From the NCBI RefSeq assembly GCF_902459465.1, contig NC_047071.1:9176001-9240000 (forward strand): a stretch of DNA of 64,000 nt, given 5' to 3'. A program made the translations under genes and the position numbers. The number at the start of each line of letters is the position of its first letter. Within the stretch, counting starts at the first letter, position 1. The notes beneath the pieces are model-generated. The model did no database searches. It saw only the letters and a program-made list of their open reading frames with translations, and was not told the DNA's origin. This DNA comes from Asterias rubens. Its lineage: Eukaryota. Below are positions 617 through 53,245 of the stretch, piece by piece.

Positions 617-1053
617 CGCTCTTCTTAGCACAGATCTCTGACAGTCGCCCCCTGAGAAAATTCCGTCGCATGAAAAATCGTCAGCGAATTGTCCAGGATG
701 ACAGCGACGACGATGAAAGTTCCGAGTGCGGTGACAGTGGCGACGTTGACAGCGATGACGGGGACGATGACAACGGAGACGACAGCAATGAGAATCCATG
801 TAAGAAACCTACGACCACGACATCGCCGACCACAACTCAAGCCACGACGACTCAAGCTACGACTCAAGCCACCACATCGGTCAAGAACACGACCATGCCC
901 CCAACAACGACAACGGTGGCGACAACGACCATGCCCCCTACAACGACAACGGTGGCGACCACAGCGATGACGACCACGACAGCGATGACGACCACGCAAG
1001 CCGTACTGACAACGCCACCAGGCAGGACTCTGCGAGGTGATGGAACGGCGTAG
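617..1053 (+). CDS. g1, last coding exon (exon 1 upstream of window): predicted secreted protein with basic N-terminus, Asp-rich block and Thr-rich mucin-like tail
   Basis: Acceptor ttcctgttttgttcacag ends at 616 in phase 1, as in the other five genes. Reads xLFLAQISDS-RPLRKFRRMKNRQR-DDSDDDESSECGDSGDVDSDDGDDD...-TTTT/TTQA/TTTMPPTTTTVA repeats-stop. No TM segment in this exon. Confidence 0.7.
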
Positions 1054-1259
1054 ACGCTTCAATCGAGGAGTTATTCAATTTAAGATAGTATTTAATATAT
1101 TTGTATCAGTTCACGAGCCATTGATTTCATGGAAACAATGATAGACTACCAAGTTCCGTAAGAAAATCATAGTGATTTTACTTTGTCCCCATTGCTACAC
1201 TAGGCGATGTACAATTTTTCCCCATCACCGAGTCATGACATGATCTTATGCAAGTCGCC

Positions 1260-1432
1260 AGACACACAAGGCCTGAAGGCCACTTCAAGGTGCGGGCTAT
1301 AATTATTTCCCAGTGGCCTACGCCTCCTACTCCTAGGGCTGAAACAGGGTTACCCATTTAACAGTCCATACAGATGAAGGCTTGGGTATGATCAGTACGA
1401 AGCTTGGCCGGTAGAGCAGATTAAAGCACTAC
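1260..1432 (-). mobile_element. SINE body fragment (same family as 56387-56655)
   Basis: The reverse complement aligns by eye with 56507-56650 (gtagtgcttt..ctgctctaccggcca..gatacccaagcct..gtatggactgt..aaccctgttt.agccctagg). Confidence 0.7.
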
Positions 1433-2524
1433 CCCCCCCCCCCCCCCCCCCCCCCCGATGGATTGCGCGTGTTCTTGGTCTAAGCCAAATTCACGTCTAA
1501 GACTAAAACTAGTGTGTGAATGATAACTAATTTAAATAATTGTATGGAGAAGATGTATATTGATCTTGGTTCATAAGTTCATAGAAGTGTTCAATGTTTA
1601 TAAAAATGAAGGAAAACCAATCAAAATATTCCCAAACTATGTAGTTACTTGTTGTATCCGGACGCAGGAGACCAAAGCCAACATGCAGCTCGCACATCAG
1701 AAGGTCAACACATCTCACTCACTTCTTCTGCCGAGTCCGGTTTCCTGAATGGCATTTCGCATTGTTATACTTCGATATAGACACATATTATAGTTTTATT
1801 GTGAATTTGTTAATTAAAACATATTAATAAGTAACTAAATATTTGAATTATTCAAGATGAAAGTATTTTTGGTCGAAGGACTCTTATTTTCTATACCAAA
1901 GTTTTATAATGTTGGCTTGTCACACATTGTGTATTAAATAATAAAAAATAAAAAATAAATCAATTTTATTGGGTTTTTATTTCGACTTGAAAACAATTAT
2001 CTGATTTGTATGAACTTATCTTACTTTACTATCTTAAAACCAGATTGGGTGAATTAAGGGTTTTGTAAATTGGTGATAACGCAAAAAAATAAAACATGTT
2101 ATTTAATGTTGATGAAATCACAGAGCAGAATGAAAGTCACCAAGTGACGTAGGAAATTAAGTCAATTATTTATAGTTATTTGAATAATTGTGCACAAACT
2201 GGTATACCAAGACCAAGCGTTCGTTATTTTTGGCGCCTAGTTTAACTCGTCTTGTTGGTTATGATTAGCTCGTGCAAGGTGCGTGCCGCCACGTTGACGT
2301 TCACGGTCAAATTTGCAAATTGCAAACTGTTTATTGAAATTCATCGGAACAGGGTCGGTTTATTTTTGGACAGGAGGTAGTCAATCGGTCGATTCAGAAG
2401 ACCGAAGTCCACATGATATAGAACATGTCAAGCGTGGCAGACAACAAATCTGACAAGGGTGTTTAATAAATAAAATAAAAAATAACATCAACAAACAAAA
2501 AGGCGAGCACATAGCGACACAGAG

Positions 2525-2851
2525 AAAGACCAGTCTCCTCACTTGGTGTATATCTCAACATATGCATACATTAATAAACTTGTGAAATGTTTAGCTCAAT
2601 TGGTCGTCAAAGTTGCGAGATAATAATGACAGAAAAACAACCTTGTCACACGAAGGTTTTGTGCTTTCAGATGCTTGATTTTGAGACCTCCAAACCTAAT
2701 TCCGAGGTCTCGAAATCAAATTCGTCGAAAATTATTTCTTTCTCGAAAACTACGTTCGTTCAGAATGTTTTATACTACCAACCTCTCCCCATTATTTGTT
2801 ACCAAGTAAGGTTTTATGTTAAACACTTATTTTGAGTAATTACCAATAGTG
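2525..2851 (-). mobile_element. Kolobok-like MITE family A, truncated copy
   Basis: Matches the reverse complement of the full copy at 23217-23567; termini eroded. Confidence 0.75.
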
Positions 2852-49914: not shown

Positions 49915-50555
49915 TTAAGACAAAATAAAGTACAATATTAAAAGTCAAATTTGAAATGAGGATGACAGTTTTCGAGGGAAAAAAATAATAATAAACAGTA
50001 TAAAAATTTAAGTTTTAAACCAGTTAGAGATGTTTGAAATTTTAACAACAAATCAAAACAAAATTATTTATCAACAAGCTATATTTCCGGGATTTTTATT
50101 TCATTTATCGGGAATCACCCCAACTATGTTGTTACGTTTTCCCCGCGTTCTCAATTTCGTTTTTTGTCTTTTTTTTTTTTTTCGTTAAAGCTCAATTTTG
50201 GGTTCATCGTGGCCTGAGATGATGTGATGATGAAACAAGTTCCATAGTGTAAGGGAAGCATCATGATTGAATTGCTTCTCAATGTTATAATGGCATTAAA
50301 TAAAACCTCCTCCATATCTGGAAACTCTTATCTGATCCAATCCAAGTTCCAATGCGGCTCAATCAACATAAAACACATCCCTTGCTTTAATTCAGGATAC
50401 ATTCATAAAGTCTCCGAAAATAAATACATTCTCGGTTGCTCGTTGTCTAAACATGAAAACGCAATCTCCAAAGTTACAAAGCCGTCACAAGTCACCACCC
50501 CAAATATAGGTGCCTAGCATTTTTCAACATCCCTGGGAAGTCAAGGAGACTTTCT

Positions 50556-50630
50556 AGCCAATGAGAACCCTCCTCCCGTTCACCAACGGGTAATGTTTAT
50601 AGTTGACGGTATCTCAGGAGTTCAGTCATC
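50556..50630 (+). promoter_or_regulatory. Probable core promoter of g6 (CCAAT, TATA-like TTTATAG, Inr-like tcagtc)
   Basis: agccaatg near 50557, tttatag near 50596, ttcagtc near 50621, ATG at 50725. Confidence 0.45.
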
Positions 50631-50724
50631 GTTTTTGAATCTCAGCCGAACGGTTTCACACTTGTCTCCCGCTGTCAGTCTGAACTTCACTCTCTGGCTA
50701 GTAGTAGCGACAGAAGACAGCAAG

Positions 50725-53245
50725 ATGAAGTCTTTTCTAGCAATCACCATTATCATGGGTAAGTCTGGTTAGGTTTAACCCTTTGAATGTTAGTGAGGAG
50801 TCTTTATGAATTTTCTTATTGTGTCCTTTGATAACTTCTTAGAGGGGAATAAAGGGCAAAATTAGTTAATGGTTTGACGTTTCGACCCTCAGAGTCTTTC
50901 TCGAGTTAGTCTTCAAGAAAGACTCTGCCTCGGTTGAAATGCCAGGCCATATTATGCTTTGTTTGCTCGTATACTATTGGGTAGGAAAGAGCAAAGTATG
51001 TTTTCTCAAAGAGCAGAATGCATCAGCAGTAATCATTGTCGAAATCTATACGCTTTAAAGATAATTGTGACACATGCAAAAGCTCCACTTATAACACACA
51101 CGTTTCTTGTTACTTCGTTTGATATCAGGGAGTCTTTAACCGTTAAAAAGTTACCATGAAAATTTAGTTAGAATTGAATTTTTTTTACAAAATGTCTTTG
51201 GGAGTACTTACCCCCAACCTGAAACAAGACAAGTGTCTTTCCCCATACAAAAGAGGTAAAGTCTGATTTACCTCACTACGTGCCGGGAGGTTTTGTTCTT
51301 AGGTACCTCTTTTTGCATTTGGGGAATTTTGGCTTACAAATCAACGGGTGCCTATAGACTGGACACAGTGTTATTTCAGCAGCAAACATATTCAAATCGC
51401 CACTGTGCAATTTCTTGAGGAAAATTGTATAACTCAACTGTATAATGAGGGTCTGTCATCGTATTTGGATTGAAAGGAGGGGTGAGGTATTTCAAGAGCA
51501 GTTGGAGCTCAGCTTACTAGAGTGCGTTTGTTTTTAGCAAGCGTCAGGATAAGCGCCTGCAATGGCAGATACCGGCACTTTATTATAAGACTTCGATTAT
51601 TATTATGTGAAGAATGGGGTCCACCTCAAACATATTCTTACTGAGCTTTTTAATAATGGAACTAAAAAGCTTTGTTATACCACCCTAAATTAGATCAGTC
51701 ATATGCGGGCGGCAGTTGCTTCATATTCAACCAAGTTTTCTGACAGAAACATCGACAATAAAACAAACCCAGATAACTTTCTAAAAAGCATATGTTTCTG
51801 CCATCGTCCGTGATTTGGTTGACTCACAGAGTCCCGCTAATAACTTACATCCGCTGTCTGTCCAAGAGCGGTCACATGTGGCCTGCTTATCTGTCAAATA
51901 AGTACCCCGCCTCACCCAGCTAAAGGGTGATTTAAATCGTTTTCTACTTCGTTTTTCTTCAGGCGAAGGTCCTCTTTGTGTCTAGAGAAGGCTAACTCAT
52001 GGTTCAGAATCCAAACTGCTTCTCTCTAATCTCACTTGATGTAATGTGCCTCGTTGGCTCAAACCCTAATCCAAACCCCTAACCCGACCAGCCCCACCCA
52101 TCATGAGACCAAATGAAAACTAGACTAATGAACATTGATTGATCGCATAGCAACAGTGGTAAACTCATTGATTCTTCAGTCTGTGAACTTTAAACCTGAC
52201 CTTTTAGCTAATTAGAAGGAAATGCGCACATCGGAATGTGTCAGCATTTCCTGTTCGGGGCGCTTTGGCTGCACATGCGCACAACCAGATCGAACTCAGA
52301 ACACTCACGTCATCTGTTGTATTTATTGAGGGTCGCCCCCCCCCCCTCCCCTCCCCTTAACCACCACCAACGTTGATGTTTGTCTTCAGCTTTTCAAATT
52401 GTTTTACTTAAATGAAAATGTTTCTTACAACTTAAATGTAACCATAACATTACTAATACTGGCATACGTTTAAATTCAAGTACTCCAAATCAACTCTCAA
52501 CTGATCACGACACCGGAGGCTTATAAGATGCCAAATCTTCAAGGAATACTAATGATAATAGGAAACATTAATATAGCGCCTTAAATATTTTTTTTTTTTT
52601 TATGTTGCAGGTTGCATGGCGTTCCTTGAGGCTGGAGTTTTGAAACAAAGCTCTGGTGAAAAACAAGCCGCATTGGGGGACCCGTTCTTCGATGCAGGCG
52701 GCACCTCCAATAACGGAGACGGTATGGGAAGTCCAGTCATCGGTGCGGGAGGCAACGCTGCAGCAGCAGCCGGCGGCGGTAACGCTAACGACGGTGGTGG
52801 CGACACACCGGACGGTGCTGACCCCGGTACATACGGAGGCTACGGAGGGTATAATGGTTATGCCGGACGTTCAGGCACTAGCCATGGTTATGGAGGAGGC
52901 CGTGATGGCTACAGAGGTACCGGCCGCTTCGATGGTTACGGTACCAACCCAGGCGGTGGCGGGTACGGCACTGGCGGGTATGGTAGGAGGTACGGTACTG
53001 GCGGCTACGGGGCAGGCGGTGATGGATCCTACAGGCCCAGAGTCGAGCAGAGACCAGCTAGACCATACGGAGCAGGAGACTCCGTGAACAGCCCCAACAC
53101 ACGAGAGGAGAAGGCAAAGAACCCCGGACAGATCGTCGGCAGTGCCGGGTCCACAGGCACTACGGTCGGTATCGTGATCGGTGTCGTAGCCCTCGTAGGT
53201 GTTGCTGCTGGTGTAGCAATCTTCGTCATCAAGAGGAGGAATTGA
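50725..53245 (+). CDS. g6, exons 50725-50758 and 52611-53245: 222-aa type-I membrane protein with Gly/Tyr/Arg-rich ectodomain
   Basis: ATG G|gtaagt donor and polyT-tatgttgcag|GT acceptor give MKSFLAITIIMGCMAFLEA-GV. GGY/GY repeats, TM VGIVIGVVALVGVAAGVAIFVI, tail KRRN. Confidence 0.9.

What the first reader, a model, noticed from the sequence alone, without database searches (positions are those of the whole stretch)
617..53245. Six-gene cluster of signal peptide + low-complexity ectodomain + anchor proteins sharing one gene blueprint
Seen: six co-oriented genes. In g2-g6 a 34-43 nt first coding exon ends in G at a phase-1 intron that splits the signal peptide (g1 shows only the phase-1 acceptor), and the rest of each protein lies in one exon. 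The ectodomains do not align and each uses a different low-complexity chemistry: Asp/Thr (g1), Pro (g2), Gly-Ser-Gln (g3), Gly-Pro/Gly-Val (g4), Ser/Glu+Gly-Ala (g5), Gly-Tyr-Arg (g6). Anchoring varies: four TM, one GPI-like, one with no anchor seen. Known: sea-urchin P16 is a small acidic Gly-rich single-pass protein with a short basic tail that is needed for spicule growth; vertebrate SCPP genes are a clustered family recognised by exon structure rather than sequence. Inference: a tandemly expanded, fast-diverging toolkit of disordered surface/matrix proteins, perhaps for skeleton, cuticle or adhesive. It would be hard to detect by homology search and is possibly undescribed in this lineage.
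Basis: partly seen in the sequence, partly recalled or inferred. Interest (0 to 1): 0.85.

Follow-up and report, generated by a model that had tools for sequence, protein, structure and literature searches.

The report
Sea star cluster of disordered surface-protein genes
Six neighbouring, same-direction genes in the common starfish each encode a small secreted or membrane-anchored protein with a floppy, repetitive outer part, built on one two-exon plan; the genes are real, but their proposed link to skeleton building is untested.

Summary
The window is Asterias rubens LR699101.1, about 9.176-9.240 Mb. It carries six co-oriented genes. Five have a 34-43 nt first coding exon ending in G at a phase-1 intron inside the signal peptide, followed by one large low-complexity exon. 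That exon-1 pattern occurs exactly five times on the + strand, never on the - strand (chance about 0.45 per strand).

- **Junction support:** RNA contigs from two runs confirm g4. RefSeq model XP_033634902.1 equals my g6 model. A. amurensis and Acanthaster models support g5. The junctions of g1, g2 and g3 remain predictions.

- **Paralogy:** only g5 and g6 show it (TM region, identical 34-nt exon 1). Their adjacency is kept in Patiria and Acanthaster, so this pair is old and moderately constrained (dN/dS 0.34 and 0.51).
- **P16 link:** a g5-family profile found nothing outside sea stars among 1.84 billion proteins. Primers of the published starfish P16 homologue do not match the Patiria g5-g6 locus. 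g5 and g6 are therefore very probably not P16; g2-g4 could not be tested.

Function is inferred, not shown. The scan separately noted seven similar genes in the adjacent upstream window (s1-150101, unchecked).

The parts
617..1053 (+). g1, last coding exon. It encodes a secreted protein with no anchor: an Asp-rich loop between two Cys, a Thr-rich mucin-like block and a C-terminal RGD. Exon 1 lies upstream of the window.
   Evidence: Phase-1 acceptor at 615-616. Composition and RGD at residue 139 of the exon-2 translation. No transcript evidence obtained.
4104..4143 (+). g2, first coding exon (40 nt, ends in G, donor GTAAGT). It encodes the first 13 residues of the signal peptide.
   Evidence: Prediction only.
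5474..6144 (+). g2, second coding exon. Pro-rich ectodomain with RGD (5878-5886), Gly-zipper TM (6049-6123) and a 6-residue tail.
   Evidence: Non-repetitive open frame of 250 codons.
11975..12011 (+). g3, first coding exon (37 nt, ends in G, donor GTAAGT).
   Evidence: No spliced contig was seen in the runs laid.
12957..13909 (+). g3, second coding exon. RVRR site (13127-13138), 32 GGSQ units (13223-13735; 24-nt tandem repeat at 13289-13738), RNRR site (13790-13801), small-residue stretch NSAASS and a terminal hydrophobic tail (13853-13906), i.e. a GPI-type signal.
   Evidence: Exon 2 depth was about 0 in runs X2, X5 and X6.
16214..16315 (+). g4, exon 1. The transcript 5' end lies near 16214 and the CDS starts at 16273 (43 coding nt, ends in G, donor GTAAGA).
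   Evidence: Contigs of X2 and X6 join 16315 to 17280. In X6, sequencing adapter directly precedes 16214.
17280..17908 (+). g4, second coding exon. Gly-Pro then (GVG)n block (17480-17563), acidic Asp/Ser block containing SGSG (17669-17716), TM (17798-17860) and a 15-residue basic tail. The 3'UTR continues past 17940.
   Evidence: Contig depth is 400-900 over the exon against about 0 in the intron. An 18-nt in-frame deletion allele lies at 17489.
33271..33304 (+). g5, first coding exon (34 nt, ends in G, donor GTATGT).
   Evidence: The same 34-nt phase-1 exon is present in A. amurensis and Acanthaster. An unannotated one is present in Patiria at L002:6733-6766.
35846..36462 (+). g5, second coding exon. 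Acidic ectodomain with a conserved Ser cluster followed by Glu (36013-36036) and DQNSGE (36217-36234), TM (36340-36405) and a conserved 18-residue tail (36406-36459).
50725..50758 (+). g6, first coding exon (34 nt, ends in G, donor GTAAGT).
   Evidence: The RefSeq gene span is 50725-53245.
52611..53245 (+). g6, second coding exon. DGGGDTPDG motif (52790-52816), Asterias-specific Gly-Tyr-Arg block (about 52832-53041), TM (53162-53230) and tail KRRN.

Best explanation
**Shown**
- The window holds part of a tandem array of small genes with two coding exons in Asterias rubens.
- Each encodes a signal peptide, a low-complexity (presumably disordered) ectodomain and usually a membrane anchor.
- g2, g4, g5 and g6 are type I proteins with a glycine-zipper-like TM and a 4-18 residue basic tail. 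g3 has a GPI-type C-terminus. g1 is a secreted mucin-like protein ending in RGD.
- g4 is spliced as predicted and abundantly transcribed.
- g5 and g6 are paralogues. The pair has stayed adjacent and co-oriented since before Forcipulatida and Valvatida split.

**Inferred**
- The whole array grew by tandem duplication. Afterwards the ectodomain was rebuilt by repeat expansion and replacement, while the exon plan (short phase-1 leader exon plus one body exon) and the anchoring topology persisted. One example is the Gly-Tyr-Arg block of about 60 residues that only Asterias g6 has.
- The proteins act as membrane-tethered polymer brushes that make up the pericellular coat of one or a few cell types. 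The TM glycine zippers may drive oligomerisation.
- The ectodomain chemistry sets the coat properties:
  - polyanionic, probably phosphorylated Ser-cluster-Glu (g5);
  - acidic Asp/Ser with Ser-Gly sites that could carry glycosaminoglycan (g4, g5);
  - O-glycosylated Thr blocks (g1);
  - Tyr-rich stretches that could be cross-linked (g6);
  - RGD for integrin contact (g1, g2).
- In working mode this is closest to sea urchin P16 and to vertebrate sialomucin or syndecan-type small surface proteins.
- Whether the cell type is skeleton-forming, epidermal or something else is unknown.
For: - **Gene models and chance control:**
- **g4 splice, 5' end and high exon depth:**
- **g6 model equals the RefSeq protein; locus identified:**
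- **g5 and g6 orthologues in A. amurensis, Patiria and Acanthaster:** conserved TM, tail and motifs.
- **g5-g6 adjacency and orientation conserved:**
- **Identical 34-nt phase-1 exon 1 in all g5 and g6 orthologues:**
- **g5-g6 paralogy:**, with negative controls.
- **Anchors, pI and motifs:**
- **Language-model neighbours:** syndecan, podoplanin, glycophorin, mucin-15/21, SMAGP and TMEM154, all at weak scores below 0.8.
- **P16 domain order:** signal peptide, Gly-rich region, Asp/Ser acidic region, TM, 13-residue tail, pI 3.7 (PMC2758014). g4 follows the same order (pI 4.25). g5 has the same parts and is also acidic (pI 4.15), but its Ser/Glu cluster precedes the Gly/Ala-rich region.
- **Allelic repeat-length variation in g4:**
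- **No other recognisable genes in the window:**
Against: - Common descent is demonstrated only for g5 and g6. g1-g4 share no detectable sequence with each other or with g5 and g6.
- A leader exon followed by one body exon is a common design for secreted low-complexity proteins, for example Sp185/333.
- The g1, g2 and g3 junctions lack transcript evidence. g3 was not expressed in the runs examined.
- No tissue, localisation, modification or phenotype data exist. Every functional step is inference from motifs.
- The Atlas neighbours score below the level at which they count as more than leads.
Confidence: 0.55

Rival explanations
1. The array is the sea star counterpart of the sea urchin p16/p16rel locus. 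One of g2-g4, or an upstream member, is the true P16 orthologue. The genes are expressed in sclerocytes under Alx1/Ets1 control and regulate ossicle (stereom) growth at the interface between membrane and mineral.
For: - g4 follows the published P16 domain order, and g4 and g5 are similarly acidic.
- P16 family genes exist in sea stars. In Patiria pectinifera the homologue is induced by alx1 and expressed in adult skeletogenic tissue (PMC4750990; PMC5831733).
- g5 keeps a conserved Ser-cluster-Glu motif of the type phosphorylated in biomineralisation proteins (the kinase specificity is established knowledge, not tested here).
- One Alx1-type palindrome lies about 160 nt upstream of the g4 5' end.
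Against: - The g5-family HMM finds no protein outside sea stars among 1.84 billion representatives. The g6 search finds only sea star proteins. Yet the real starfish P16 hits Sp-P16 at 6e-11 by plain BLAST.
- App16 cloning and qPCR primers do not match the 31 kb Patiria miniata g5-g6 locus, even allowing up to 4 mismatches.
- The only P16 stretch available to me (40 residues of LvP16) shows no significant similarity to g4, g5 or g6.
- No g5 or g6 orthologue peptides appear in the Patiria skeletal-proteome supplement.
- Alx1-type sites are not enriched: 6 found against 2.75 expected, and 9 of 100 shuffles reach 6.
Confidence: 0.2
2. Apart from the g5-g6 pair, these are unrelated lineage-specific genes that merely share a generic design for secreted low-complexity proteins. 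They sit together by chance or because the region is permissive for new genes to arise. There is no common function.
For: - No sequence similarity among g1-g4, or between them and g5 and g6.
- The leader-exon plus body-exon plan recurs in unrelated families. Other unchecked notes on this genome report similar designs elsewhere.
- g3 is not co-expressed with g4 in the runs examined.
Against: - All six genes are co-oriented, and no other recognisable gene lies between them across 53 kb.
- Five of five genes have a first coding exon within a 10-nt length range, in the same phase, and split inside the hydrophobic core rather than at the cleavage site.
- Four of six have the same topology, with a Gly-rich TM and a short basic tail.
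- An unchecked note reports seven more genes of the same plan immediately upstream.
Confidence: 0.2
3. The genes encode secreted or shed effectors rather than coat proteins. Examples would be immune or antimicrobial Gly-Tyr-rich peptides, adhesive or cuticle precursors released by furin cleavage, by analogy with Sp185/333.
For: - g3 has two furin-type sites around its repeat domain, and g1 has no anchor.
- RGD together with Gly-rich regions recalls Sp185/333.
- The Gly-Tyr-Arg block in g6 is lineage-specific.
Against: - Four of six proteins are stably anchored by a TM, and no cleavage site lies next to the membrane.
- The members are not similar to one another and lack a His-rich region, unlike Sp185/333.
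- The held supplements of the crown-of-thorns spine secretion paper contain none of the g5/g6 orthologue accessions, names or peptide strings searched.
Confidence: 0.05

Closest known systems
Sea urchin P16 (UTMP16) and the P16rel genes
   Same: A small type I protein with a signal peptide, a Gly-rich neutral stretch, an acidic Asp/Ser stretch, a C-terminal TM and a short cytosolic tail, with pI about 3.7-4.3 (PMC2758014, against g4 and g5). It is echinoderm-specific and localises to the cell surface (bioRxiv 10.1101/2023.03.22.533866).
   Different: No sequence similarity could be shown. g5 and g6 are very probably not the P16 orthologue. The exon structure and synteny of the urchin locus could not be compared. 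No expression or phenotype data exist for the sea star genes.
Sea urchin Sp185/333 (SpTransformer) gene clusters
   Same: Small clustered genes with two exons: a very short first exon for the hydrophobic leader and a second exon for the whole mature disordered protein, with Gly-rich regions and RGD (PMC3342357).
   Different: [quoted passage not shown] Members are highly similar to one another and have His-rich tails. Here exon 1 is 34-43 nt, the phase-1 intron splits the signal peptide, members are dissimilar and most carry a TM.
Vertebrate SCPP gene cluster (caseins, enamel and dentine/bone SIBLING proteins)
   Same: A tandem array of secreted disordered proteins recognised by gene structure more than by sequence. 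The Ser-cluster-Glu motif conserved in g5 resembles the casein phosphate centre (background knowledge).
   Different: From background knowledge, SCPP genes have many small exons and are secreted rather than TM-anchored. Descent from SPARCL1 has no counterpart here. The resemblance is an analogy only.
Small type I sialomucin or proteoglycan-type surface proteins (podoplanin, CD164/MGC-24, glycophorin A, syndecans)
   Same: Signal peptide, disordered ectodomain that is probably glycosylated, a single Gly-rich TM and a short basic tail. These are the nearest language-model neighbours. There are weak TM-region Pfam matches: Podoplanin at 17.7 bits and MGC-24 at 13.6 bits.
   Different: All Pfam scores are below the curated cut-offs of 30 and 28.5 bits. 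There is no syndecan C1/C2 tail match. No homology is claimed.

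Membership tests
Sea urchin P16/P16rel family | Detectable sequence similarity to Sp/Lv-P16. 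The published starfish homologue App16 hits Sp-P16 at 6e-11 by BLAST. | tested here: not met
   - g5: the family HMM against 1.84 billion representatives returns only its own sea star family.
- g6: only sea star hits.
- A 40-residue LvP16 fragment against g4, g5 and g6 gives E of 0.78 or worse.
- g4: the full search was swamped by low-complexity candidates.
- g1-g3 were not searched, so for g1-g4 this remains open.
Sea urchin P16/P16rel family | Domain order: signal peptide, Gly-rich, acidic Asp/Ser, TM, short tail; strongly acidic. | tested here: met
   Met in full by g4 (pI 4.25). g5 (pI 4.15) has the same parts but in a different order: its Ser/Glu cluster lies N-terminal to the Gly/Ala-rich region. 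Not met by g1, g2, g3 or Asterias g6.
Sea urchin P16/P16rel family | Identity with the starfish P16 homologue already cloned (App16). | tested here: not met
   None of the four App16 primers matches Patiria miniata loci L001 or L002 (the g5-g6 region plus or minus 10 kb), allowing up to 4 substitutions. The caveat is that the primers come from the congener P. pectinifera.
Sea urchin P16/P16rel family | Expression in skeletogenic cells downstream of Alx1/Ets1; synteny with the urchin p16 locus. | not testable with these tools
   Run metadata are coded. No urchin locus or P16 sequence could be fetched. Alx1-type palindromes are not significantly enriched.
Sp185/333 | Members share high sequence identity and element mosaics; His-rich C-terminus; exon 1 of 51 or 54 nt encoding the hydrophobic leader. 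| tested here: not met
   No similarity between members except g5 and g6. There is no His-rich region. Exon 1 is 34-43 nt and splits the signal peptide. Compared.
Syndecan (PF01034) | Conserved C1/C2 cytoplasmic domain recognised by the Pfam model. | tested here: not met
   No Syndecan hit at E of 1 or better for any of the six proteins. The only link is weak Atlas neighbours at 0.74-0.75.
Podoplanin (PF05808) | Score at or above the Pfam gathering cut-off of 30 bits. | tested here: not met
   g6 scores 17.7 bits, E = 0.0044, over the TM segment only.
Vertebrate SCPP | Descent from SPARCL1, with the characteristic multi-exon gene structure and a secreted product. | tested here: not met
   These genes have two coding exons with a phase-1 intron, and most products are TM-anchored. 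The SCPP features are taken from background knowledge.

The most novel reading that the evidence does not exclude
The array (six genes here, possibly about a dozen counting the upstream window) is a sea star 'toolkit locus' for its pericellular or skeletal matrix. In this reading, genes evolve by wholesale replacement of the ectodomain while keeping only the leader-exon plan and the membrane anchor. One of the untested members (g2-g4 or an upstream gene) would be the functional or true counterpart of P16. That would make it an echinoderm parallel to the vertebrate SCPP locus. It would also give a defined set of candidates for stereom or cuticle formation in a class where the skeletal proteome lacks the urchin spicule-matrix proteins.
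Probability: 0.15. Interest if true: 0.75.

Novelty: new member of a known kind. Interest (0 to 1): 0.45.

Why it matters
- **A gap in sea star biology.** Sea stars build a calcite stereom but lack the urchin spicule-matrix and MSP130 proteins in their skeletal proteome (PMC5460417). Lineage-restricted disordered surface proteins are therefore plausible missing players.
- **A hard case for annotation.** The database names given to these proteins are plainly wrong, which shows how poorly such genes are handled by automatic naming.
- **A dated evolutionary example.** The g5-g6 pair is an orphan membrane-protein pair held in synteny across sea star orders. The ectodomain of g6 gained a new Gly-Tyr-Arg block in Asterias alone. 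This shows how low-complexity domains turn over around a fixed anchor.
- **What limits the value today.** No function, tissue or phenotype is known. Family status for four of the six genes rests on architecture only.

Tried and rejected
- **g4 homologue search:** failed. The 8000 candidates sharing most words were low-complexity noise and none scored.
- **Pfam:** nothing above cut-off on the six proteins or on ten other ORFs in the window.
- **ESM Atlas:** only weak neighbours, all below 0.8.
- **Upstream walk in other species:** the 10 kb upstream of the g5 orthologues in Patiria, Acanthaster and A. amurensis holds no g1-g4-like sequence by tblastn or ORF listing. I could not walk further because no protein ids were available.
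- **Transcript contig for g5:** the ENA contig carrying the g5 ORF had no DNA available.
- **Self-comparison of the window:** only interspersed repeats are shared between gene regions.
- **Sea urchin P16 sequence:** could not be obtained. Only a 40-residue LvP16 fragment quoted in PMC2758014 was usable, and it gave nothing significant.
- **Literature and supplement searches:** searches for the accessions, names and tryptic peptides found nothing. The A. rubens footprint paper has no held supplements.
- **Alx1-type palindromes:** not enriched.
- **Syndecan idea for the g5 tail:** rejected, because neither Pfam nor the HMM search supports it.
- **Structure prediction:** not attempted, because the proteins are low-complexity and expected to be disordered.

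Full report
**Origin of the window**

- The exon-2 translation of g6 is 90% identical to an Asterias amurensis protein.
- A 222-residue member of the same cluster is XP_033634902.1 from Asterias rubens, annotated as 'putative glycine-rich cell wall structural protein 1'. It is identical to my spliced g6 model.
- Its gene lies at 9,226,725-9,229,245 of GCA_902459465.3 LR699101.1. The window is therefore A. rubens, about 9,176,001-9,240,000 on that chromosome.

The six long + strand ORFs sit at the stated places. Each contains a pyrimidine-preceded AG that begins the exon at codon position 2, which means a phase-1 intron: 617, 5474, 12957, 17280, 35846 and 52611.

Upstream of g2-g6 there is in each case a single convincing first coding exon, 0.9-2.5 kb away: 4104-4143, 11975-12011, 16273-16315, 33271-33304 and 50725-50758. 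They are 40, 37, 43, 34 and 34 nt long. Each ends in G before GTAAGT, GTAAGA or GTATGT. Joined to exon 2 they give in-frame proteins of 236, 329, 223, 216 and 222 residues with typical signal peptides.

As a chance control I scanned the whole window, both strands, for this pattern: ATG, a hydrophobic open frame of 31-46 nt ending in G, then a consensus donor. It occurs exactly five times on the + strand, at these five exons, and never on the - strand. First-order Markov simulations give a mean of 0.445 per strand and a maximum of 4 in 200.

All-against-all BLASTP confirms that the ectodomains do not align.

**Transcript and annotation support**

I laid contigs of four public runs on 11960-17940.

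- Two runs (X2, X6) contain contigs that skip exactly 964 nt with GT..AG ends. After the stated 3-nt shift the junction is 16315|17280, which is the predicted g4 intron.
- In X6, sequencing adapter sits directly before 16214, so the g4 transcript 5' end is close to that position.
- g4 exon depth is 400-900 and intron depth is about 0. The runs behave as RNA and g4 is highly expressed.
- g3 exon 2 was essentially uncovered in those RNA runs and no g3 joint was listed. g3 remains a prediction, as do g2 and the g1 acceptor.

For g5 and g6 the support is indirect but strong.

- The RefSeq model equals my g6 model.
- The A. amurensis and Acanthaster models of g5 and g6 start with the same spliced N-termini.
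- Every orthologue gene I could dissect has a 34-nt phase-1 first exon ending in G.
- The Patiria g5 model lacks that exon, but an unannotated one is present at L002:6733-6766.

**Relationships among the six genes**

Only g5 and g6 are demonstrably related.

- BLASTP gives 52% identity over 31 residues, E = 6.9e-6.
- hhalign between the two orthologue alignments gives 90.9% probability, E = 1.2e-6, over the juxtamembrane, TM and first tail residues.
- The TM-bearing g2 and g4 serve as controls. They score only 0.5-2.7% against the same profiles, so the g5-g6 match is more than generic TM composition.
- g5 and g6 also share the exact exon-1 length of 34 nt.

No DNA similarity links any of the genes beyond interspersed repeats in their introns. 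Common origin of g1-g4 with the rest is therefore an inference. It rests on co-orientation, the exon plan, the topology and the absence of any other recognisable gene between them.

An earlier unchecked note of this scan (s1-150101) reports seven more genes of the same plan in the adjacent upstream window, with g1 as its seventh. I could not verify this.

**Age and constraint**

- g5 and g6 orthologues are adjacent and co-oriented in Patiria miniata, about 9.3 kb apart.
- The same holds in Acanthaster planci, about 8 kb apart, and in A. amurensis, about 15 kb apart.
- The TM and tail are almost invariant. g5 keeps several ectodomain motifs, namely DTPDDQD, a Ser cluster followed by Glu-Glu, and DQNSGE. 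g6 keeps DGGGDTPD.
- Between A. rubens and A. amurensis, dN/dS is 0.34 for g5 and 0.51 for g6. Introns are 89-93% identical.
- This amounts to relaxed but real purifying selection, not unconstrained divergence.
- Turnover does happen inside the ectodomain. g4 shows an 18-nt in-frame length allele in its GVG repeat.

**Comparison with known families**

- Pfam gives nothing above cut-off. The best hits are Podoplanin at 17.7 bits for g6 and MGC-24 at 13.6 bits for g2, both confined to the TM region.
- The g5-family profile, scored against 1.84 billion representative proteins, found only its own sea star family.
- Atlas neighbours are small type I sialomucin or proteoglycan-like proteins (syndecan, podoplanin, glycophorin, mucin-15/21, SMAGP, TMEM154). 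All are at weak scores.

*P16.*

- The published description is: signal peptide 1-17, Gly-rich neutral stretch, Asp/Ser-rich acidic stretch, TM 126-148, 13-residue tail, pI 3.7 (PMC2758014). g4 matches this in order of parts. g5 has the same parts and a similar pI, but its Ser/Glu cluster lies before the Gly/Ala-rich region.
- P16 homologues are, however, detectable in sea stars by ordinary BLAST. App16 hits Sp-P16 at 6e-11, is induced by alx1 and is expressed in adult skeletogenic tissue (PMC4750990). Dylus et al. list P16 among the categories conserved in four echinoderm classes (PMC5831733).
- The four App16 primers do not match the Patiria g5-g6 locus.
- The 40-residue LvP16 fragment I could obtain is not significantly similar to g4, g5 or g6.
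- I conclude that g5 and g6 are very probably not P16. g2-g4 are untested, because my g4 search was swamped and no searches remained.

*Sp185/333.* This family shares the plan of a short leader exon plus one body exon, along with clustering, Gly-rich regions and RGD (PMC3342357). It differs in exon length, in where the intron falls relative to the leader, in the high similarity between its members, in its His-rich tail and in anchoring.

*SCPP.* The comparison is an analogy only.

**Function**

Nothing here shows function. My best reading is a set of membrane-tethered disordered coat proteins whose chemistry differs by gene. The motifs behind this are:

- a conserved Ser-cluster-Glu in g5, of the type phosphorylated in secreted calcium-binding proteins;
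- an Asp/Ser block with SGSG in g4 and a conserved NSGE in g5, which fit glycosaminoglycan attachment contexts;
- Thr-rich blocks in g1;
- RGD in g1 and g2;
- furin-type sites and a GPI signal in g3.

All of these are sequence-level inferences. A skeletal role is possible but unsupported. The held Patiria skeletal-proteome supplement contains none of the predicted tryptic peptides of the g5 or g6 orthologues, which is weak negative evidence. No paper mentions these accessions.

**Verdict**

The genes are annotated in RefSeq but uncharacterised and misnamed. The 'one family' claim is proven for one pair only, and the P16 and skeleton reading remains a hypothesis. This is a moderately interesting, sea-star-restricted example of a known kind of locus, not a new category.

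Noticed in passing
window 31210-32059 (wider G-rich zone about 30000-32300): Minisatellite of about 40 copies of a 21-nt unit, with higher-order periods of 42, 63 and 135 nt. GC skew is strong (+0.41 over 30-32 kb) and frames are open on both strands. There is no significant Pfam match. It lies in the g4-g5 intergenic region.
   Followed up: partly
window 12090-12474, 33883-34261, 23236-23571, 58209-58576 and at least 8 more copies: Interspersed repeat of about 390 nt, 74-88% identical between copies, sitting in the g3 and g5 introns and in intergenic DNA. It gives enormous summed contig depth (10^5-10^6) in every run laid, so it is a very abundant, probably SINE-like element.
   Followed up: partly
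window 15283-15454, 37619-37799, 41791-41973, 48954-49115: Second short repeat family of about 170 nt, 88-92% identical between copies. It also has very high contig depth in the RNA runs.
   Followed up: no
window 22388-22460 (-): tRNA-like sequence (Rfam tRNA 33.6 bits). ARAGORN reports an abnormal four-base anticodon. It is probably a tRNA-derived repeat or a pseudogene.
   Followed up: no
window 17489 (g4 GVG repeat): An 18-nt in-frame deletion allele (six residues) appears in the transcript contig of run X2 but not in X5 or X4. This is repeat-length polymorphism in the g4 ectodomain.
   Followed up: no
L002:6733-6766 (Patiria miniata JADOBP010000026.1): The RefSeq model XP_038072025.1 ('oleosin-B3-like') starts at an internal Met. 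An unannotated 34-nt phase-1 first exon encodes a signal-peptide start like that of Acanthaster and Asterias g5, and lies 3.2 kb upstream.
   Followed up: yes
window about 52832-53041 (g6): The Gly-Tyr-Arg block is absent from the g6 orthologues outside the genus Asterias (P0002-P0005). It is therefore a lineage-specific insertion or expansion, and it changes the ectodomain from acidic to basic.
   Followed up: partly
window 29228-29621 and 47187-47548: A pair of segments of about 390 nt that match each other in both orientations at about 80% identity. This suggests a palindromic or foldback-type element present in two copies.
   Followed up: no
L003:8300-8600 (Acanthaster DF978670.1): Assembly gap (run of N) flanked by a long GAT/ATC trinucleotide repeat, upstream of the g5 orthologue. 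I left it as it is.
   Followed up: no
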